In this document: positions 29,954 to 64,000 of the stretch, piece after piece
Layout of the letters: every line of letters begins with the position of its first letter
Numbering within the stretch: position 1 is the first letter of the stretch
Virus record (IMG/VR): IMGVR_UViG_3300021338_000003
Coordinates: 62,001 to 126,000 of that record
Reading direction: 5' to 3' (one strand)
Length of the DNA: 64,000 nt
Notes under the pieces: generated by a model
What the model was told of the DNA's origin: nothing
Seen by the model: only the letters and a program-made list of their open reading frames with translations
The model's database searches: none
Program-made: the position numbers and the translations under genes

Positions 29954-29982
29954 ATCCGGTGTTCCAACCTGGAGACTCTCAA

Positions 29983-31131
29983 ATGCAGCACGGCAAGTTC
30001 AACATCTTCCTCGACAGCCAACACGGTAGCAGCGGGAAGGGTCTCATGACCCCTTTTCTGGCTGACCGGTATGAGTCCCGGTGTGTCAGCACTGCCAACT
30101 TCCCCAACGCCGGCCACGTCACCCGTCGTGCCGATGGGTCTGTGTTCATGGCCAAGGCCATTGCTACGGCAGCGTTCCTGAACCGGTATGGACAGACCGT
30201 GGACGCCTACATCTCCCCTGGTTCGGGGTTCTACCCCGAACGGTTCCTCTTCGAGTGGAACGAGTGCGGACGGCCCGATGTCTACATCCACGGCCGCGCT
30301 TCTGTGGTCACCGAAGACCATGCTGCTCGGGAGCGGGAAGGCAAGCAGTCCACCAAGCATATCGCGTCCACCATGCAGGGGTCTGGGGTTGCCATCTCCG
30401 ATAAGGTGATGCGGGGTCAGGGTATCCTTCTGGCTCGGAACATCGATTGGGAGCTTGAGGCCAAGAAGGTTGGCATCGATGGCGACCTTTCCTCTATCCA
30501 CGTTCTGTCTGCCCAGGACTTCCGAAACCGGGTATTTGAGGAAATCCCCAAGACTACGTGGCTTCACGAGGGTAGTCAGGGGTATGCCCTATCCATTGAC
30601 CACGGAAGCCACTACCCCCAGTGTACCTCGCGCAACTGTTCTGCCCAGGCAGCCATGGACTACATGGCCATCCCCCCGAAGATGGTCGGGGATGTCTACT
30701 TGAACGTTCGCACTTTTCCAATCCGGGTTGGCAACGTCAAGGATGACGATGGCAATGTCCTGGGATATTCTGGAGACTTCTACCCTGACCAGACCGAAAT
30801 CACCTGGGACAAAATTGCCGATGACGCCGGATTCCCCCCGGAGGCCAAGGCCGAGCTGTTCAAGAAGGAACATACCTCGGTCACCAAGCGCCTGCGCCGG
30901 GTCAGCACCCTATCCTATTCGGCGCTCCGCGACGCTGTCCGAGTCAATGGTTGCACGAAGCTTGCTTTGAACTTCGTGCACTACAACGACTACAAGGACC
31001 TTGGAGTGACCGAGTTCGCCAAGCTTTCCCAGAAGACTAGAGAGATGGTTGACCGCTTGGAAGATGAGACCGGCGTTCGAGTGGCTCTCATTGGTACCAG
31101 CGCCTTCCACGAGACGGTAATCCTACGGTAG
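29983..31131 (+). CDS. purZ: N6-succino-2-amino-2'-deoxyadenylate synthase PurZ (adenylosuccinate synthetase paralogue)
   Basis: DSQHGSSGKG (Ser at the PurA catalytic Asp), PNAGH, IASTMQG, EGSQG, YPQCTSR, PIRVG, SGDFYPDQTEITW, TSVTKRLRR, and LNF in place of the PurA TKLD GTP motif; GGAGA RBS before ATG 29983. Confidence 0.85.
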   Translation: MQHGKFNIFLDSQHGSSGKGLMTPFLADRYESRCVSTANFPNAGHVTRRADGSVFMAKAIATAAFLNRYGQTVDAYISPGSGFYPERFLFEWNECGRPDVYIHGRASVVTEDHAAREREGKQSTKHIASTMQGSGVAISDKVMRGQGILLARNIDWELEAKKVGIDGDLSSIHVLSAQDFRNRVFEEIPKTTWLHEGSQGYALSIDHGSHYPQCTSRNCSAQAAMDYMAIPPKMVGDVYLNVRTFPIRVGNVKDDDGNVLGYSGDFYPDQTEITWDKIADDAGFPPEAKAELFKKEHTSVTKRLRRVSTLSYSALRDAVRVNGCTKLALNFVHYNDYKDLGVTEFAKLSQKTREMVDRLEDETGVRVALIGTSAFHETVILR

Positions 31132-35244: not shown

Positions 35245-37143
35245 ATGGCCAAGAGCAAGGAATATAACAAGGACTCCATTCGCCAGCTCCAAGGGCTGGA
35301 ACCCATCCGCCTGCGCCCCGGCATGTATGTGGGTGGTTCGGGCAAGGGAGGATTCCACCATATCCTATGGGAGGTCATCGACAACTCGGTCGATGAATTC
35401 CTGGCCAATCACTGCACCAAGATTCGGGTTCGGATCGATACCAAGCGCAACGTGGCTTCTGTCGAGGACGACGGACGAGGCATTCCTACCGAGACTCACG
35501 CCCAGACTGGCGAACCCACTATCGTATCGATCTTCACCAAACTTCACATGGGCGGGAAGTTCGAACGAGGTGAGGCGTATGCCCTATCCGGCGGTCTCCA
35601 TGGTGTTGGTGCCAAGGCCACCTGTGCCCTATCCGATCGGATGACCGTTTGGTCCTTCCGGGGTAAGAGGGTATACCGGGCTGATTTCTCGAAGGGAAAG
35701 ACTGTCAAGCATGGTCCTGACAAGAAGTCCAAGCCTCGGCCACATGGAACCAAGGTCATGTTCCACCCAGACCCTGAGATCTTCCGAAAGATCAAGTTCG
35801 ACGTGGACCTCATCCGGAATCGAATCCGGTCTACCTCTCACCTCTGCCCAGGTCTCACCATTCTGTTGGTGATCGATGGTAACAAACCCGAGGTATTCAA
35901 GTCCTCTGAGGGTCTGTCCGGTCTTCTGCGGGAGCACTTGGGCAAAGAAGAGCCCCTGTTCGATGAGCCTCTTACCTTCAACCTCCATGACTCGGAGACC
36001 AAAGAGGGCATCGAGGTCTCCATGTGGTGGACCGATGGTGATGGGGAGAAGTGGTACACCTTCGTCAATATGATTGACATCGAAGGTGGGTCCTATGAGC
36101 CTGGTGCTAAGTCCGCAATCACCAGGGAACTCAAGAAATTCTGCAAGGCCGACAAGGTGTCGGGTGATGATTTCCGAGACGGTATGCGGGTGGCCTGTCA
36201 CATCAAGCTCCGGGACCCCCAGTTCGAGGGCCAGACCAAGAACAAGCTCAACAACCCGGAGATGTCCAGTATTGCGGAAAGGGTGTTTGGGGCGCGGCTC
36301 CGAAACTTCCTATCGAAGAACCCGGCCATTACCAAGAAGATCATTACCCGTGCCACTGAGCTTGCCAAGGCCCGGGCAGCCTACAAGGCCAGCCGGAAGA
36401 TCGCCACCCAGACAGCCTATGCCAAGGACCCATCCTCTCGTCGAGGGCTGCCGATGAAGCTCACGGCTGCGCTGGGATGCAAGGCCGAAGACCGCGAACT
36501 CTTCATTGTTGAGGGTGGGTCGGCTGGTGGCTCCGCTATCCGCGGTCGCGACGGAAAGTGTCAAGAGGTTTTGGCACTTCGGGGAAAGATCCCCAATGTC
36601 ACTCCCATCACTGACATGGTGAAGCTTTCGAAGGTGTTCGAGAATGAGGAGATCGACGCCATTATTCGGTCCGTAGGGGCAGGACACGACCTGGAGATGC
36701 CTGGTGAGTCCTGTGACCCCGAGAAGGCACGGGTAGGCAAGGTGGTTCTCTTGACCGATGCCGATGCCGATGGTGGCCACATCGATGCCCTCCTCCTAGG
36801 TTTCATGCTTCGATTCATGTACCCACTGGTGGAGAAGGGTATGGTGTGGGTGGCCCGTCCTCCCCTTTTCGTGGCCAAGTGGGGCAACAACCGGGTATAT
36901 GGTGACTCCCGGGAGGAGGTCATCGGTCTGGCTCAGAAGAAGGGCGTGAAGAAGCCCCAGGTAAGCCGGTTCAAGGGTCTAGGTGAGATGAATGCAGCCG
37001 AGTTGGCCGAAACCAGCATGAGCCACAAGACCCGCCGTCTACAGCAAATCACCGCCGATCGGTCTAGCATTCAGAAGGTCATTGACCTGATGGGGTCGGA
37101 CTCGACCGCCCGTAAGCAACTCTTGCTGGGGGATGACGCGTGA
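35245..37143 (+). CDS. gyrB: type IIA DNA topoisomerase subunit B (GyrB/ParE-like)
   Basis: LQGLEPIRLRPGMYVG, EVIDNSVDE, DDGRGIP, GGLHGVG (GHKL ATPase); FEGQTK; ELFIVEGGSAGG, LRGKI, TDADADGGHI, RFKGLGEMN (TOPRIM). Confidence 0.95.
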   Translation: MAKSKEYNKDSIRQLQGLEPIRLRPGMYVGGSGKGGFHHILWEVIDNSVDEFLANHCTKIRVRIDTKRNVASVEDDGRGIPTETHAQTGEPTIVSIFTKLHMGGKFERGEAYALSGGLHGVGAKATCALSDRMTVWSFRGKRVYRADFSKGKTVKHGPDKKSKPRPHGTKVMFHPDPEIFRKIKFDVDLIRNRIRSTSHLCPGLTILLVIDGNKPEVFKSSEGLSGLLREHLGKEEPLFDEPLTFNLHDSETKEGIEVSMWWTDGDGEKWYTFVNMIDIEGGSYEPGAKSAITRELKKFCKADKVSGDDFRDGMRVACHIKLRDPQFEGQTKNKLNNPEMSSIAERVFGARLRNFLSKNPAITKKIITRATELAKARAAYKASRKIATQTAYAKDPSSRRGLPMKLTAALGCKAEDRELFIVEGGSAGGSAIRGRDGKCQEVLALRGKIPNVTPITDMVKLSKVFENEEIDAIIRSVGAGHDLEMPGESCDPEKARVGKVVLLTDADADGGHIDALLLGFMLRFMYPLVEKGMVWVARPPLFVAKWGNNRVYGDSREEVIGLAQKKGVKKPQVSRFKGLGEMNAAELAETSMSHKTRRLQQITADRSSIQKVIDLMGSDSTARKQLLLGDDA

Positions 37144-56707: not shown

Positions 56708-59700
56708 ATGGACTCGTTGCCGAGAAAGCCCCGCAAGAAGTCGTGCCTGGGATGCCCTCTGAAAGGTCAAAGGAACTCCGAATGGTTGCTTCCTACGGTA
56801 TACACCCCTGACCCCGAGGGACACGTAGACATCCTCTTCGTCTTGGACTCACCTGACTATCAGGCCAATGAGACGAAGAGCCTGAAGAATCATAGTCATG
56901 TGGCTTTCATTAACAAGTGGCTTAAGAAGGGTCTATCCCGTCGGGGGAAGGTCAGAAAGCTAGGACGAGGCATTGCGTTTACCTCGGCGACCCGATGCAT
57001 CCCTTTGGATAAGAAGAAGTCCAAGAGAAAGCCCGAAAGTGAGGAGCTGAACCGATGCATTGACTACACCACTCGGGATATGGCGGAATTGGCCCCAAAG
57101 TTGACGGTTCTATTGGGGTCCTCGGCTATCCACTCGATGTTCCCTCATGCTGGTGGAGCCACTGCATCTGCCGGAACCGTTGAAGAAGACCCCCTAGGCA
57201 ACCTCATCTTCTTTGCTTATAGCCCTGCTTTCGTTGAACTTTCGAATGACCCCGAAGTTCTTCGGGAATGGAAGAAGCAAGTCATCCGGATTCTTGAGCT
57301 GGCCGGCTGGGTCAAGGATAAGCACGCCCCCAAGAGCCGCGGTGTTGTCATCGAAGTGGGCGACGATTTCGAGGTATCTGGGGACTACCCTACCTGTGCC
57401 GAAGAGGTCAAATCCATCTACATCGACGATGTAGAGAAGGTGTTCAAGCTGGCCAAGAAGATGCAAAGTCTGCCTAAGGGCGCGGTCATATGCTCTGATA
57501 CCGAGGCCAACAACCTCTTTCGGGCATTTGATAACAAAATGCTATCCGTTCAGTTCGGATGGGATGGAAAGTCGGGATATGTAGTCCCCTACCACCACCG
57601 GAAGAGTCCCTTCAATGCCGATGACAAGAAAGCCATCTATGACTGCATGCAAGACCTTTTCACGACCCGCACCAAGAACGGCGGGTTGTGGTGTTTTGCC
57701 AATGCAGCATATGATATGCATCAATTTCGACGGGAGTTTGAGTGTGAACTCCTCTCTATGGACAATGTAGACGTTTCCCAGGTTGCCCACCTGTTGGACG
57801 AGAACAGGCTCCAAGGGACCCGGGACCCTGAGTGCTACTACCAAGGAAAGCGAGGTCTGTCTCTAGCCGTCCTATCCGAAGTGTACCTCGGGGTTGTCCT
57901 CTCTTCTGAAGATAAGAGAGAGCGTGCGTCCATCCGCCGTTGGCCTATGAAGCGTTTCGTCCCCTACGCCGCTGGGGATGTTGTGTGGCCCTGGCAAATC
58001 CTCCAGAAACAGCTCCTACAAGCTGATGACCAGGATTACCGGCGGCCTCTGCTCCGCCTAATTCGATTTCTTCTGTCTCCCGCCAACCTCTTGGTGGTTG
58101 AGATGGAACAGAATGGATTTCCGGTCGATCTGGAGCACACTCGGAGAATTCGCGGTGCTGCTAGCCCCCTGATTGCCGAGAAAAAGCGCCTGATGGGCCT
58201 TCTATCCAAGACGCGGGGCGGGAAGAAGGCCAACAAAATTATCAATGGTCGGGCAGCCCGGGGTAATCACTATCTCTTCGGAGAGCCCCCATTCAGTCTC
58301 AAGCCATCCAAGGCCAACCACCGGGAGACATTGTTCCTCGACGTTCTGCGGTACAAGCCACTCACCTTCACCGAGCAGGGTGCACCCCAAATCAACTCCG
58401 AGTTCTACAAAGAATATGGAGTGTGGGATGATAATGATGAACCCCAGAATGAAGCGGCCATCATATCAGATTGGGTCGGGGTCGACAAGCTCCTGTCCTC
58501 GTTTGTCAAGAACTTCTACGCTTTGGTTGACCCCGACCGTGGGCATCCAGACATGGTGTGGGATTGCCGCGTCCGTCCGTCTATTCGTCTGGCTGCCACT
58601 ACATCGGGCCGCCCTGCTATCAAAAACCCAGCCATGCAGCAAATCCCTCGGGCCACCGATTCCTACCGGAAGGACGTCAAGGACATGTTTGTGTCCGAAG
58701 AGGGGAAGGTCCTCATCCTGGCAGACCTCAAGGCCAACGAGGTCCGATGGGGTGCCATCAATGCCCAGGCCAAGATTCTAGGAAACCTGTTTCAGGACGG
58801 TCTCAAGGCAGTCAAGAGATTCCGGAAGTTTGCCGATTCCCTGGAAGGCACGGACAAGAGGGCATATCAGGAGTGGCTGCGTCTCGCTGAGGTCAAGGAG
58901 TTGTCTGGCAAGCAGAAGCGGACCAAGATCAAGATCGAGAGACGGCCGAAGATGAAAAAGCTCTTGAAGCTTGCCGAAGAGGCGTCCCTTCGAGGAGACA
59001 TCCACAAGCAGACCGCCTCTACCTTCTATTCGGTGCCCCTCAAGGAAGTCAGTAAGGGGCTTCGTCAGGATACCAAGGCGGTCATTTTCGGTCATATCGC
59101 TGCTCGTGGACCCAAGGCCATTTCCGAGCAGATTGGAAAGAGCATTGACGAAACAAAGGCACTCCTCCGTGATTTTGACCGCAAGTTCCCGGGCCTTGCC
59201 AAACACCTCAATGATAATGCCCGTCTGGCCGAGTCCCGAGGGTATACCGAAGGACCTCAGGGTCGTCGACGTCGGTTCGCTCGGGCTGTTTGGTCAGACC
59301 CTGAAGAGTGGGTGCAGGCCAAGGCCCGGCGCCAGGCCCGGAACAACGGCATCCAGGGCTCGGCATCTGATGCCTGTCTGGTGGCCGGATTCCAGCTCTT
59401 GGACTACATCCGGAAGAATGACAAGAGCTGGAAGCTCCTGAATATGGTGCATGATGCCCTGTATATCGAAGTCCCTGTTTCCGAACTTCCGGCCGCCCTG
59501 GAGGCCGTCGAGCTATCTTTGACCGATTGGACCATGGAGTGGATGTCCGAGAAGTTTGGAATCAACTTCGTGGCTCCTCTTGAGGCTGATGTGGATGCTG
59601 GTCTATCCTGGGGAACATACGTGACCTGGAACGGCACCCAACCTCATATCGATGTGGTCATGGAGTGGGTCAAAGCCCAGCACACCAAGAAATGGGGTTG

Positions 59701-59764
59701 GGACGGTGTCGATGAATCCATGAGGCCCGATCGAAGTGGCGAGGTCCAGTCTGTCATGCTATAA
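56708..59764 (+). CDS. polA: family A DNA polymerase with N-terminal family-4 uracil-DNA-glycosylase-like domain and 3'-5' exonuclease
   Basis: UDG-like CLGCPL, TRCIP, ELNRC, LLGSSA; exonuclease DTE, NAAYD, YAAGD; polymerase TSGR...PAMQQIPR, motif A DLKANEVR, motif B RQDTKAVIFG, NNGIQG, motif C VHD; AGGAGG RBS. Confidence 0.92.
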   Translation: MDSLPRKPRKKSCLGCPLKGQRNSEWLLPTVYTPDPEGHVDILFVLDSPDYQANETKSLKNHSHVAFINKWLKKGLSRRGKVRKLGRGIAFTSATRCIPLDKKKSKRKPESEELNRCIDYTTRDMAELAPKLTVLLGSSAIHSMFPHAGGATASAGTVEEDPLGNLIFFAYSPAFVELSNDPEVLREWKKQVIRILELAGWVKDKHAPKSRGVVIEVGDDFEVSGDYPTCAEEVKSIYIDDVEKVFKLAKKMQSLPKGAVICSDTEANNLFRAFDNKMLSVQFGWDGKSGYVVPYHHRKSPFNADDKKAIYDCMQDLFTTRTKNGGLWCFANAAYDMHQFRREFECELLSMDNVDVSQVAHLLDENRLQGTRDPECYYQGKRGLSLAVLSEVYLGVVLSSEDKRERASIRRWPMKRFVPYAAGDVVWPWQILQKQLLQADDQDYRRPLLRLIRFLLSPANLLVVEMEQNGFPVDLEHTRRIRGAASPLIAEKKRLMGLLSKTRGGKKANKIINGRAARGNHYLFGEPPFSLKPSKANHRETLFLDVLRYKPLTFTEQGAPQINSEFYKEYGVWDDNDEPQNEAAIISDWVGVDKLLSSFVKNFYALVDPDRGHPDMVWDCRVRPSIRLAATTSGRPAIKNPAMQQIPRATDSYRKDVKDMFVSEEGKVLILADLKANEVRWGAINAQAKILGNLFQDGLKAVKRFRKFADSLEGTDKRAYQEWLRLAEVKELSGKQKRTKIKIERRPKMKKLLKLAEEASLRGDIHKQTASTFYSVPLKEVSKGLRQDTKAVIFGHIAARGPKAISEQIGKSIDETKALLRDFDRKFPGLAKHLNDNARLAESRGYTEGPQGRRRRFARAVWSDPEEWVQAKARRQARNNGIQGSASDACLVAGFQLLDYIRKNDKSWKLLNMVHDALYIEVPVSELPAALEAVELSLTDWTMEWMSEKFGINFVAPLEADVDAGLSWGTYVTWNGTQPHIDVVMEWVKAQHTKKWGWDGVDESMRPDRSGEVQSVML

Positions 59765-62604: not shown

Positions 62605-62928
62605 ATGAACGAGTTGTATATCAAGGTTAAGCTCACCGACCTGGTGTTTGACCAGTATGGGTGTGAAATTCTGGACCAGACTATGGATATTGACGCTAAC
62701 AATATCCTTGATGTCTGTAGAAACCTGGGTATGGAAACACATCCTGATGGACACAACGAAACACTGATTGGGACCCCCCAACAGATACTGAGGGTCATGA
62801 AAGGGCTGGTAGCAGCAATAGAGAAGGCCAGAGAAGACCAAGCAATTGCAGAATTGGCCGCTGTCATTCCCTCTTCTGAGACGCAGGTGGCGTTCTCTGA
62901 TAACCACCTTGCTGAGGACCCGTTCTGA
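62605..62928 (+). CDS. hypothetical protein
   Basis: AGGAG RBS. Confidence 0.6.
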   Translation: MNELYIKVKLTDLVFDQYGCEILDQTMDIDANNILDVCRNLGMETHPDGHNETLIGTPQQILRVMKGLVAAIEKAREDQAIAELAAVIPSSETQVAFSDNHLAEDPF

Positions 62929-63746
62929 TGTGGCACTTCGTTGACCTCTGCTGTGGGTCCGGCGCCATTACGTTGCATCTTCTGGGTGCCCGGAAGGCCA
63001 TTCTACCCTACCAGGGGTCGAAGTGGAAGCTTCGGGGGCATATTGCCTCATACTGTCCGGGAGGGGCACCCCAGACCGTAACCCTAGTGGACCCAAGTCC
63101 CTGGTCCGAAACCCTAGGTGTTGTTATAAACCCCAAGAAGCGAGAACAACTAGTATCGTACCTGGAATGTCTTGCAGCAAAAGACCCCCGGGAAGTGTAC
63201 GACTCTTTGCAGGGCCATTCGGTTCCAGAAGACCTCATTGAAAGGGCTGGTCAACACCTGTTCCTTCAGCGTCTTGCATTTTCTGGGAAAGCGGTAGGGG
63301 TTAACAGAGGCAATTGGAGCAGCCCGGGGTTCAATGGTAGTAGTGCCTATGGTATTCCGGCTACGGATAAGTTTGGGGCCATCAATCCTATGATTCCGTC
63401 CCTCATCAAAACATTGAAGAGTTACAACCTGGAACCCACCCTGGTTAGAACGCGTCGAGGCAGAGCCGCGGTTCCAGAAAAGGTTCCGCCCAACACCTTT
63501 GTGTACATTGACCCTCCATACCAGTTAGCCACACCATACCCGGATGGTTCTCTGGGCCGCGATGAGGTTATCTGGTTGGCTCAACAATGGAGGGAGAGGG
63601 GGGCTAGCGTCCTAATCTCTGAAAGGGAGCCGATTGTCATCCCTGGCGGAGGTTGGTGGGTCAAGAATATTACAGCCGGGCGAGATATTGACTCCCCGTT
63701 CGTCGGAAAGCATAGTGAGTGGCTAACTGGGAGCAACGACTTATGA
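62928..63746 (+). CDS. Dam-like (D12 class) amino-DNA methyltransferase with rearranged motif order
   Basis: FVDLCCGSGA (SAM motif I), LPYQGSK (motif X), AFSG, FVYIDPPY (catalytic motif IV), VLISE, EWL. Confidence 0.8.
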   Translation: MWHFVDLCCGSGAITLHLLGARKAILPYQGSKWKLRGHIASYCPGGAPQTVTLVDPSPWSETLGVVINPKKREQLVSYLECLAAKDPREVYDSLQGHSVPEDLIERAGQHLFLQRLAFSGKAVGVNRGNWSSPGFNGSSAYGIPATDKFGAINPMIPSLIKTLKSYNLEPTLVRTRRGRAAVPEKVPPNTFVYIDPPYQLATPYPDGSLGRDEVIWLAQQWRERGASVLISEREPIVIPGGGWWVKNITAGRDIDSPFVGKHSEWLTGSNDL

Positions 63747-64000
63747 GTGCCCGAGACTTTGAAAATCTCGTGAGGGCCCCTATGCTGACTCGAAAGGGAA
63801 AGGTAACCATCGTTATCTACACCATCTGCGTCTTGGTGATACTTGTGATGGCTACCAAAAAGGCTGTTGACCATCTTAACACCAAGGCCGGGTTCTATGG
63901 CGCCTGCGTTGAGGTCAATGACCCCTACCGGTCCAAAGTGATTGATGGAACGTGCTTCCGTCGCAGCGAGGATGGGTGGGTTGAAATAAACATTCCCAAA
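63743..64000 (+). CDS. membrane-anchored small protein, 3'-truncated
   Basis: ATGA overlap; hydrophobic helix VTIVIYTICVLVILVMA; frame open to the window end. Confidence 0.5.
   Translation, partial: MSARDFENLVRAPMLTRKGKVTIVIYTICVLVILVMATKKAVDHLNTKAGFYGACVEVNDPYRSKVIDGTCFRRSEDGWVEINIPK

What the first reader, a model, noticed from the sequence alone, without database searches (positions are those of the whole stretch)
62928..63746. Dam-like methyltransferase with swapped motif order, in a genome that may lack adenine
Seen: SAM-binding motif I (FVDLCCGSGA) is at the extreme N-terminus, before the PYQGSK motif X. The stretch after motif X runs straight into a motif-II-like VTLVD. Known: Dam/D12 enzymes have the order X-I-II...IV (DPPY). 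This looks like a local permutation. An N6-adenine-type enzyme is also paradoxical if A is replaced by Z. Inference: it may methylate Z (giving a doubly modified base), residual A, N4-cytosine or host DNA.
Basis: partly seen in the sequence, partly recalled or inferred. Interest (0 to 1): 0.62.

Follow-up and report, generated by a model that had tools for sequence, protein, structure and literature searches.

The report
Dam-like methyltransferase with rewired N-terminus
A marine jumbo phage carries an intact Dam-type DNA methyltransferase whose cofactor-binding motifs sit in an unusual but conserved order; the oddity is real, but it belongs to a mostly bacterial enzyme family and is not tied to the phage's adenine-replacement (PurZ) gene.

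Summary
The ORF at 62928..63746 (+, 272 aa) is real, and its motif order is as reported: motif I (res 4-13), then the Dam "motif X" loop YQGSK plus helix (res 24-40), then motif II (res 50-60), and DPPY at 195-198. All recognisable members among 120 homologues keep this order. An AlphaFold model (pLDDT 92) has a complete 7-stranded methyltransferase core. Dam, DpnM, T4 Dam and M.CbeI superpose from residue 21 on, while generic Rossmann methyltransferases align from residue 1. The nearest named relatives (Vibrio phage vB_CoeS_P1, Bacillus phage BUCT083) share the same motifs in the canonical X-I-II order. So the X module has been transposed, not circularly permuted.

The link to a Z genome is not supported. 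Six of seven contexts examined are bacterial chromosomes. MAGs carrying the gene have only one PurA-like gene. Two known Z phages lack any D12 enzyme, and none of 173 PurZ phage records has a homologue.

The phage does encode a PurZ-type synthetase (Asp13 to Ser). No DatZ or MazZ was found, but a dUTPase and an NDT-like gene are present. Published work reports that Dam and M.EcoRI methylate Z in vitro, so the "paradox" is weak.

Verdict: a new topological variant of a known enzyme kind. Target base and motif are unknown.

The parts
62928..63746 (+). Complete ORF (272 aa plus stop) of the D12/Dam-like DNA methyltransferase with I-X-II-...-IV motif order
62937..62966 (+). Motif I (res 4-13, FVDLCCGSGA): strand beta1 plus the glycine loop that binds AdoMet, at the extreme N-terminus
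   Evidence: Strand 3-6 in the model. It aligns to motif I of the canonical-order relatives. Generic Rossmann methyltransferases align from residue 1.
62997..63047 (+). Transposed motif X module (res 24-40, loop LPYQGSK plus helix), lying between helix A and strand beta2
   Evidence: Y28, Q29, G30, K32, W33 and R36 are invariant. The segment is a 23-25 residue insertion relative to P0122 and P0123, which carry YQGGK plus helix in front of motif I. Dam-family structures align from model residue 21 to Dam residue 3.
63075..63107 (+). Motif II (res 50-60, VTLVDPSPWSE): strand beta2 ending in the invariant acidic D55
   Evidence: Strand 50-55 in the model. D55 is invariant. It aligns to IIMLDKSPWG and ITMVDKSEWG of the relatives.
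63258..63290 (+). D12 signature block (res 111-121, LFLQRLAFSGK) at the start of the target-recognition region
   Evidence: It aligns to the LYLNRYGYNG block of Dam and DpnM. L111, L113, Q114, R115, L116, G120 and K121 are invariant.
63510..63521 (+). Catalytic motif IV, DPPY (res 195-198), directly after strand beta4
62605..62928 (+). Upstream 107-aa ORF of unknown function; its stop overlaps the methyltransferase ATG (TGATG), suggesting translational coupling
   Evidence: no Pfam or PHROG hit
56708..59764 (+). Family A DNA polymerase with 3'-5' exonuclease and an N-terminal UDG-superfamily domain, on the same strand 3 kb upstream. This places the methyltransferase in a replication gene block.
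29959..31131 (+). PurZ-type adenylosuccinate-synthetase homologue (390 aa, GSSGKG in place of the GDEGKG of PurA). This is the basis for the 'may lack adenine' premise. It lies 32 kb from the methyltransferase.
   Evidence: criterion from PMC12884076

Best explanation
The ORF encodes an intact AdoMet-dependent DNA amino-methyltransferase of the Dam/D12 (alpha-class) fold. It belongs to a family that no curated model covers.

In this family the 'motif X loop plus helix' module normally precedes strand beta1. Here it has been moved to lie between helix A and strand beta2. The chain therefore runs beta1/motif I, helix A, X loop, X helix, beta2/motif II, target-recognition region, then beta4/DPPY and the rest of the core. 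The parts appear to occupy their usual places in space, and only the wiring differs (inferred from structural alignment ranges).

The family is found mostly as solitary genes, with no restriction partner recognised, scattered patchily in chromosomes of large marine Myxococcota-like bacteria. A few copies sit in jumbo phages.

In this phage the gene lies in a block with the DNA polymerase and an NDT-like nucleotide-metabolism gene. It most likely methylates a short, still unknown motif in replicating phage DNA. The target atom is probably the exocyclic N6 of adenine, or of 2-aminoadenine if the genome is Z-substituted. The likely roles are to blunt host restriction or to copy a host mark.

Shown here: the ORF, the motifs, their order, family-wide conservation, the fold, and the lack of linkage to purZ. 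Inferred: activity, target base, target motif and biological role.
For: ORF and start codon.

Superfamily:
- PF02086 scores 24.5 bits against a cut-off of 22, covering residues 73-200 only.
- phrog_56 'DNA methyltransferase' gives 9e-14.
- A family profile hits DpnM and Dam chains in the PDB.
- The AF2 model has pLDDT 92.3 and pTM 0.90, with seven core strands at 3-6, 50-55, 172-177, 190-194, 227-232, 244-249 and 264-268.
- Foldseek E-values run from 5e-10 to 3e-5 to Dam, DpnM, M.CbeI and T4 Dam.
- VIA Z is 12-16 over 204-222 residues.

Rewiring:
- Dam-family chains align from model residue 21 to Dam residue 3, whereas KsgA, RsmD and other Rossmann enzymes align from residue 1.
- ESM Atlas structural matches to D12 clusters also begin at residues 19-22.
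- BLASTP and hhalign (probability 98.4%) against the canonical-order relatives align motif I to motif I and motif II to motif II. Residues ~21-45 are left as an insertion, while the relatives carry YQGGK plus helix upstream of motif I.
- The Dam NCBIfam profile aligns the N-terminus of P0122 (residues 7-53 to profile positions 2-47) but not that of P0001.

Conservation: 34 columns are invariant, including the X module, D55 and DPPY. All recognisable members have the order I-X-II-IV. The permuted family is one clade against canonical outgroups, with SH-aLRT 100.

Distribution:
- Contexts are housekeeping genes in six bacterial contigs.
- One context is a 199-kb phage-like contig, next to rIIA/rIIB-like genes.
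- Six loci lie in MAGs titled Myxococcales, MYXO or Deltaproteobacteria.
- Six of 121 sampled genomes of that order have a match.

No link to purZ.

Z as a possible substrate: PMC8342488.
Against: - No activity, target base or recognition motif has been measured.
- DPPY does not settle adenine against cytosine, because M.CbeI (7M6B, the top VIA match) is an alpha-class N4-cytosine enzyme with DPPY.
- I could not read model coordinates. That the X loop reaches the AdoMet pocket is therefore inferred from alignment ranges and conservation, not seen.
- The self-protection role is a guess. The genome avoids several restriction sites outright, which shows that methylation does not cover all threats. 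Unannotated neighbours in the bacterial loci could hide a restriction partner.
- P0001 sits on a long branch (1.5 changes per column), so relaxed constraint cannot be excluded. All family-invariant residues are nevertheless kept.
Confidence: 0.7

Rival explanations
1. Z-specialised enzyme: the permuted N-terminus is an adaptation that goes with purZ, and the enzyme's natural job is to methylate 2-aminoadenine, giving a doubly modified base.
For: The phage has a PurZ-type gene with the Asp13-to-Ser hallmark. It also has an NDT-like gene two genes downstream of the methyltransferase and a dUTPase. This resembles the accessory set that PMC12884076 describes for PurZ0 phages. N6 of Z is chemically available, and Dam and M.EcoRI accept Z in vitro (PMC8342488).
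Against: - The same permuted architecture is conserved in bacterial chromosomes that hold only a single PurA-like gene, and in a PurZ-less viral contig.
- No homologue appears in 173 PurZ phage records.
- Z phages SH-Ab 15497 and Bm1 have no D12 enzyme.
- P0001 differs from the family consensus at only a few mostly conservative positions, none in motif IV or the X loop.
Confidence: 0.07
2. It is an N4-cytosine methyltransferase of the alpha class, like M.CbeI. This would sidestep any question about adenine in a Z genome.
For: M.CbeI (7M6B) is the top VIA match, at Z 15.8 with rmsd 2.8 over 211 residues. It carries DPPY yet makes m4C (PMC8616854, PMC3425538).
Against: The Z-score is tied with Dam (14.8) within the tool's stated tolerance. 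From my own knowledge, nearly all characterised D12 enzymes make m6A, and M.CbeI was published as 'unique'. Sequence similarity to 7M6B is negligible (E 0.27).
Confidence: 0.12
3. The enzyme acts mainly on host DNA or has a regulatory role (for example timing of replication or packaging, or host takeover), rather than protecting phage DNA from restriction.
For: Bacterial family members appear to be orphans with no restriction partner recognised, as is typical of regulatory methyltransferases. The phage relies on outright site avoidance for at least three hexamers.
Against: There is no direct evidence either way. The gene sits with replication genes on the same strand, which fits action on nascent phage DNA. 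The family is patchy in the bacterial order sampled (6 of 121), unlike lineage-wide regulators such as Dam or CcrM.
Confidence: 0.12
4. The unusual order is an artefact (wrong start, frameshift or assembly error), or the protein is a decayed, inactive remnant.
For: The Pfam match is marginal and partial. P0001 sits on a long branch in the tree.
Against: The order is conserved in more than 100 independent sequences from NCBI, JGI, ENA and Logan assemblies. The start is fixed by the TGATG overlap. All invariant residues are kept. The model is confident with a complete seven-strand core.
Confidence: 0.03

Closest known systems
Dam / DpnM / T4 Dam (D12 class, alpha-group N6-adenine DNA methyltransferases; Pfam PF02086)
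   Same: Same fold (VIA Z 12-15). Same catalytic DPPY after beta4. Same LxLxRxxFxG block opening a target-recognition region that lies between the cofactor half and the catalytic half. Same kinds of cofactor motifs: X loop with G-x-K, glycine loop, and an acidic residue at the end of beta2.
   Different: The order of the first two modules is I-X-II instead of X-I-II. Sequence similarity is marginal (PF02086 24.5 bits over residues 73-200 only; TIGR00571 20.6 bits against a cut-off of 114.85). The recognition hairpin differs, so GATC specificity cannot be assumed.
Unnamed canonical-order sister group: 'DNA methyltransferase' of Vibrio phage vB_CoeS_P1 (XTP71313.1) and a hypothetical protein of Bacillus phage BUCT083 (UOX38255.1)
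   Same: It shares the distinctive spellings DLCCGSG (motif I), D-K/P-S-P/E-W-G (motif II), Q..SFG.K, VNPM.P and DPPY, and a YQGGK X loop. hhalign probability is 98.4%, E 5e-15.
   Different: These proteins have X loop plus helix in front of motif I, and only about 20 residues between the glycine loop and motif II. The family studied here lacks the N-terminal segment and has the X module inserted between them. Identity is about 24%.
M.CbeI of Caldicellulosiruptor bescii (PDB 7M6B), alpha-class N4-cytosine methyltransferase
   Same: Best structural match (Z 15.8), with a DPPY motif and alpha-class layout.
   Different: The VIA alignment pairs model residue 21 with M.CbeI residue 1, as for the canonical-order Dam chains. 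Its motif order was not read here. It makes m4C at GGCC. There is no significant sequence similarity.
Known permuted DNA methyltransferase classes (beta, gamma, zeta and others; Malone 1995, Jeltsch 1999, Bujnicki 2002; recalled from my own knowledge, the Bujnicki paper is not held in the library)
   Same: They show that the methyltransferase fold tolerates re-ordering of its sequence blocks while keeping the same three-dimensional arrangement.
   Different: Those classes differ by circular permutation or by the position of whole blocks (cofactor half, catalytic half, recognition domain). Here two small adjacent modules inside the cofactor half have changed places. This is a non-circular swap, and I found no description of it in two literature searches.

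Membership tests
D12 class / alpha-group amino-DNA methyltransferases (Pfam PF02086) | Significant match to the family profile | tested here: met
   PF02086 scores 24.5 bits against a cut-off of 22, E 2.7e-5, but covers only residues 73-200 of the protein. A family profile hits DpnM at E 1.8e-4.
D12 class / alpha-group amino-DNA methyltransferases (Pfam PF02086) | Dam-like three-dimensional fold with the recognition region between the cofactor half and the catalytic half | tested here: met
   The AF2 model has pLDDT 92.3. Foldseek E-values to Dam, DpnM, M.CbeI and T4 Dam run from 5e-10 to 3e-5. VIA Z is 12-16.
D12 class / alpha-group amino-DNA methyltransferases (Pfam PF02086) | Catalytic motif IV (D/N/S)PP(Y/F) after strand beta4 | tested here: met
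   DPPY at 195-198 directly follows strand 190-194. D195, P196 and Y198 are invariant in the family.
D12 class / alpha-group amino-DNA methyltransferases (Pfam PF02086) | Linear motif order X - I - II - III - recognition region - IV-VIII | tested here: not met
   The order is I (4-13), X (27-32), II (50-60), then IV (195-198). It is conserved in the family. E. coli Dam, P0122 and P0123 have X before I.
D12 class / alpha-group amino-DNA methyltransferases (Pfam PF02086) | Transfers methyl from AdoMet to N6 of adenine in DNA | not testable with these tools
   This needs an enzyme assay or methylome data. M.CbeI shows that the fold plus DPPY can also give m4C.
Dam proper (GATC-specific; NCBIfam TIGR00571) | Score over the curated cut-off of the Dam subfamily model | tested here: not met
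   20.6 bits against a cut-off of 114.85. GATC is under-represented in the genome (observed/expected 0.57), which gives no support for GATC as the protected site.
Type II restriction-modification system (methyltransferase with cognate nuclease) | A restriction endonuclease gene next to the methyltransferase | tested here: inconclusive
   No nuclease family was recorded among neighbours in the phage or in seven other loci. Several neighbours have no annotation, and restriction enzymes are often missed by profiles.
Z-genome (PurZ) gene set | Co-occurrence of the methyltransferase family with purZ across genomes | tested here: not met
   Four MAGs with the gene hold one PurA-like gene each and no match to the phage PurZ. 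Viral contig G005 has none. No homologue appears in the PurZ-bearing phage records. SH-Ab 15497 and Bm1 have PurZ but no D12 enzyme.
Z-genome (PurZ) gene set | This phage has PurZ with Ser in place of the catalytic Asp13 of PurA | tested here: met
   The motif is QHGSSGKG, against QWGDEGKG in E. coli PurA and QFGSTGKG / QYGSTGKG in the PurZ of SH-Ab 15497 and Bm1. The criterion comes from PMC12884076.
Z-genome (PurZ) gene set | dATP-removing partners DatZ (PF12917/PF13023) and MazZ-type (PF03819, PF04447, PF18909) | tested here: not met
   There is no match in the 250,817-bp record, which is estimated 91% complete. Two of these searches (PF04447, PF18909) had no positive control. A dUTPase and an NDT-like protein are present instead.

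The most novel reading that the evidence does not exclude
In this PurZ-bearing jumbo phage, the rewired Dam-like enzyme methylates N6 of 2-aminoadenine in vivo, so the virion DNA carries a doubly modified purine (N6-methyl-2-aminoadenine) at a specific motif. Separately, the I-X-II wiring would be a previously undescribed non-circular permutation class of DNA methyltransferases.
Probability: 0.2. Interest if true: 0.75.

Novelty: new variant of a known kind. Interest (0 to 1): 0.42.

Why it matters
DNA methyltransferases are the textbook case of one fold surviving sequence permutation, and the accepted classes are defined by the order of their blocks. A conserved family in which two small neighbouring modules of the cofactor-binding half have changed places would add a non-circular kind of rewiring to that picture.

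It also explains why Pfam and NCBIfam models barely see these proteins: most members carry no precomputed Pfam domain, and the few that are named are mostly "hypothetical protein". That matters for methylome annotation in marine Myxococcota-like bacteria and their large phages.

For Z-genome biology the result is mostly negative but useful. This enzyme family is not part of the Z toolkit. A PurZ phage that also carries two methyltransferases is still a good natural test of whether Z gets methylated in vivo.

Tried and rejected
- Near-identity DNA search of the phage collection found nothing.
- tblastn of the Z-cluster proteins of SH-Ab 15497 and Bm1 against the whole phage genome found only PurZ and a weak polymerase match.
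- The PF01966 HD hit turned out to be a SpoT-like HD_4 protein, not DatZ.
- I first took the phrog_1211 label as proof of PurZ. I dropped that because the profile scores bacterial PurA at about 430 bits. I relied instead on the Asp13-to-Ser criterion and an alignment.
- My greedy ORF caller picked a 300-aa antisense ORF over the methyltransferase. I rejected this as a high-GC artefact, given the homology evidence.
- I looked for intermediates with two X modules, which a duplication-then-loss route would predict. None was found among 120 homologues.
- I looked for phage-specific substitutions near the active site that might signal adaptation to Z. None was convincing.
- The tree did not resolve whether the two phage copies share one origin (quick search only, P0001 on a long branch).
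- Bujnicki 2002 could not be read because it is not held.
- The dZ restriction paper's main text does not mention SacI or StuI, and mentions XhoI only as a cloning site.
- The large representative-protein search, read laying, complex prediction and a second fold were not used. No claim here rests on absence of relatives or on binding.
Full report
**What is there**

The window is part of a 250,817-bp IMG/VR virus record, at positions 62001-126000, with estimated completeness 91%. The same DNA is held by three seawater metagenome runs. The ORF at 62928..63746 (+) gives 272 residues. Its ATG shares one base with the stop of the upstream ORF (TGATG), and no in-frame start lies further upstream, so the N-terminus is fixed.

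- FVDLCCGSGA at residues 4-13
- PYQGSK at residues 27-32
- VTLVDPSPW at residues 50-58
- DPPY at residues 195-198

**Is it a Dam-like enzyme?**

Yes, but a remote one.
- Pfam PF02086 scores 24.5 bits against a cut-off of 22 and covers only residues 73-200.
- PHROG 56 "DNA methyltransferase" gives 9e-14.
- The NCBIfam Dam model reaches only 20.6 bits against a cut-off of 114.85, and no curated NCBIfam model covers the protein.
- A word-based search found 167 homologues, mostly metagenomic. The 120 listed are 41-52% identical, and few carry a name.
- A profile of 37 of them hits DpnM and E. coli Dam among solved structures, aligned from about residue 78 onward.
- An AlphaFold2 model built on that alignment is confident (mean pLDDT 92.3, pTM 0.90). 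It has seven core strands at 3-6, 50-55, 172-177, 190-194, 227-232, 244-249 and 264-268, plus a helical and hairpin region at 59-165.
- Foldseek finds Dam, DpnM, M.CbeI and T4 Dam at E-values from 5e-10 to 3e-5.
- VIA-align gives Z 12-16 over 204-222 residues.

**Is the motif order really swapped?**

Three independent lines say yes.

1. The order is conserved in the family. Y28, Q29, G30, K32, W33, R36, D55 and D195/P196/Y198 are invariant in the 37-sequence alignment.
   - A pattern test on 120 homologues gives I-X-II-IV in 94.
   - The other 26 failed at least one of my motif patterns.
   - Thirteen of those were read at the N-terminus. Seven are gene calls that begin inside helix A, including the one apparent X-I case (P0118). 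Six carry motif I in a spelling my pattern missed.
   - The other 13 missed only the motif II or motif IV pattern.
   - None has two X motifs.
2. The structural alignment ranges point the same way. Dam-family chains align from model residue 21 to Dam residue 3. Generic Rossmann methyltransferases (KsgA, RsmD and others) align from model residue 1. ESM Atlas structural matches to D12 clusters likewise start at residues 19-22. With seven strands in all, strand 3-6 must be beta1 and strand 50-55 must be beta2.
3. The nearest named relatives have the canonical order, and this is the most telling line.
   - The relatives are a "DNA methyltransferase" of Vibrio phage vB_CoeS_P1 and a hypothetical protein of Bacillus phage BUCT083.
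   - They share the family's distinctive spellings (DLCCGSG, D-K-S-P/E-W-G, Q..SFG.K, VNPM.P, DPPY) and a YQGGK loop, but in the canonical order X-helix-I-II.
   - BLASTP and hhalign (probability 98.4%) pair motif I with motif I and motif II with motif II.
   - That leaves residues ~21-45 of the phage protein as an insertion. The relatives instead have about 33 extra residues, bearing YQGGK plus a helix, in front of motif I.
   - The Dam NCBIfam profile aligns the N-terminus of the Vibrio-phage protein (X to I) but not that of P0001.

So the X loop-plus-helix module has been transposed from before beta1 to between helix A and beta2. This is a swap of two adjacent small modules, not a circular permutation.

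In a quick tree the permuted family is one clade against the two canonical outgroups, with SH-aLRT 100. Canonical order is the rule in Dam and its relatives, so the permuted order is most simply the derived state (inference). A duplication of the N-terminal segment followed by two losses would produce it, but I found no intermediates.

**How it most likely works**

All cofactor and catalytic elements are intact, and every family-invariant residue is kept in the phage copy. I therefore expect an active AdoMet-dependent enzyme that flips its target base into the DPPY pocket, as Dam does (inference from the family).

I infer, from alignment ranges and conservation, that the X loop still reaches the cofactor pocket from its new position.

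The target base is most likely adenine N6, on the prior for this class. However, the top VIA match, M.CbeI (7M6B), is an alpha-class N4-cytosine enzyme that also carries DPPY. Cytosine N4 therefore cannot be excluded. The recognition motif cannot be read from the sequence.

**Link to a Z genome**

The phage does have a PurZ-type gene at 29959..31131.
- It has the Asp13-to-Ser change (QHGSSGKG against QWGDEGKG in E. coli PurA) and shares indels with the PurZ of SH-Ab 15497 and Bm1. PMC12884076 reports this change in 100% of phage PurZ sequences, against 99% Asp in PurA.
- Its best matches in the phage collection are PurZ of known Z phages, at 30-35% identity.
- The PHROG label by itself is not diagnostic, because that profile scores bacterial PurA far higher.

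I did not find DatZ (PF12917, PF13023), MazG (PF03819), DUF550 (PF04447) or DUF5664 (PF18909) in the record. Two of those searches had no positive control. There is a dUTPase. There is also an NDT-like DUF7768 protein two genes downstream of the methyltransferase. This recalls the DutZ/DmtZ set that PMC12884076 describes for PurZ0 phages. Z substitution is therefore plausible but unproven.

The methyltransferase family itself is not tied to purZ.
- Six of seven genomic contexts examined are bacterial chromosomal neighbourhoods with kinases, sulfatases, HemB, malate synthase and the like. No restriction enzyme family is recorded.
- The seventh context is a 199-kb phage-like contig, where the gene follows rIIA/rIIB-like genes.
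- Genome-collection loci fall in MAGs titled Myxococcales, "MYXO" or Deltaproteobacteria.
- Four such genomes of 6.6-9.8 Mb each contain exactly one PurA-like gene (436-444 aa in three of them) and no match to the phage PurZ.
- Within that bacterial order, 6 of 121 sampled genomes have a match at E 1e-10 or better, four of them over most of the profile and two only in fragments. The gene is therefore patchy and not lineage-wide.
- A 75-kb viral contig with a 40%-identical member has no PurA/PurZ.
- tblastn of the enzyme against 50,697 phage records found only the two canonical-order relatives. None of the 173 PurZ-bearing records was hit.
- SH-Ab 15497 and Bm1 have PurZ but no D12 enzyme. The two canonical-order sister phages have the enzyme but no PurA/PurZ.
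- The phage copy shows no striking departures from the family consensus near the catalytic or cofactor motifs.

The supposed paradox is also soft. PMC8342488 cites older enzymology showing that E. coli Dam and M.EcoRI methylate 2-aminoadenine-containing sites in vitro, at least tenfold less efficiently, and that 6-methyl-2-aminoadenine blocks a nuclease.

**Comparison with what is known, and novelty**

The enzyme works like a Dam/D12 alpha-class amino-methyltransferase and passes the tests for fold, motif IV and profile match. It fails the defining linear order X-I-II.

Known permuted classes of DNA methyltransferases differ by circular permutation or by the placement of whole blocks. That statement rests on my own knowledge of Malone 1995, Jeltsch 1999 and Bujnicki 2002, because the last could not be read here. 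Two literature searches found no description of an I-X-II arrangement. That is weak evidence of novelty, not proof.

I rate it a new variant of a known kind.

**Verdict**

The "local permutation" reading is supported. The Z-genome reading is not supported at the family level, and it remains an open, testable side question for this one phage.

Confidence that this is an intact D12-fold DNA methyltransferase with a transposed X module, unlinked to purZ, is high. Confidence in the N6 target and a restriction-shielding role is moderate to low.

Noticed in passing
Whole genome G000 (250,817 bp), of which the window is 62001-126000: AGGCCT, CTCGAG and GAGCTC have zero copies, against 56-78 expected from a Markov model. 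GATC is at 0.57 of expectation. This is strong restriction-site avoidance. It is notable in a genome that may also use Z and that carries two methyltransferases.
   Followed up: partly
window 29959..31131 (+); genome 143417-143803; L006:2364-2852 (genome 126013-126501, just past the window end): A PurZ-type gene (Ser for Asp13) occurs without detectable DatZ, MazG, DUF550 or DUF5664. A dUTPase and an NDT-like DUF7768 protein (phrog_355, nucleoside 2-deoxyribosyltransferase) are present instead. This matches the accessory set reported for PurZ0 phages. If it is real, this would be a Z-type pathway in a 250-kb jumbo phage from seawater.
   Followed up: partly
window 56708..59764 (+): A 1018-aa family A DNA polymerase carries a 3'-5' exonuclease domain and an N-terminal uracil-DNA-glycosylase-superfamily domain. 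A 2025 preprint lists UDG among the Pfam domains associated with dZ contigs.
   Followed up: no
L028:1172-1807 (genome 54171-54806, outside the window): This is a second, small (211 aa) DNA methyltransferase candidate with YPTP and GNPPF motifs (phrog_799, 9e-31). The phage therefore probably makes more than one methyl mark.
   Followed up: partly
L005:1375-1893 (genome 238822-239340): A SpoT/RelA-type HD_4 domain protein (172 aa) is a possible (p)ppGpp hydrolase. It is not DatZ.
   Followed up: partly
PHROG phrog_1211, as used: The profile labelled '2-aminooxy adenylosuccinate synthetase' scores ordinary bacterial PurA at about 420-440 bits, and this phage's PurZ at 160-170 bits. It also rings in all 14 control genomes. 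The label alone should not be used to call PurZ.
   Followed up: yes
L022:6271-10867 (Logan contig of 199,292 bp): Another large phage-like contig carries a 48%-identical permuted methyltransferase directly after rIIA-like (HATPase_c_3) and rIIB genes. This is a different neighbourhood from the one in this phage.
   Followed up: no
window 35245..37143 (+): A topoisomerase II large-subunit homologue (phrog_543, 1.7e-127) lies 4 kb downstream of PurZ.
   Followed up: no
window 63719..64000 and on (L006:2070-2354): A 94-aa ORF with one predicted hydrophobic helix overlaps the last 28 bases of the methyltransferase gene. It has no family match.
   Followed up: no
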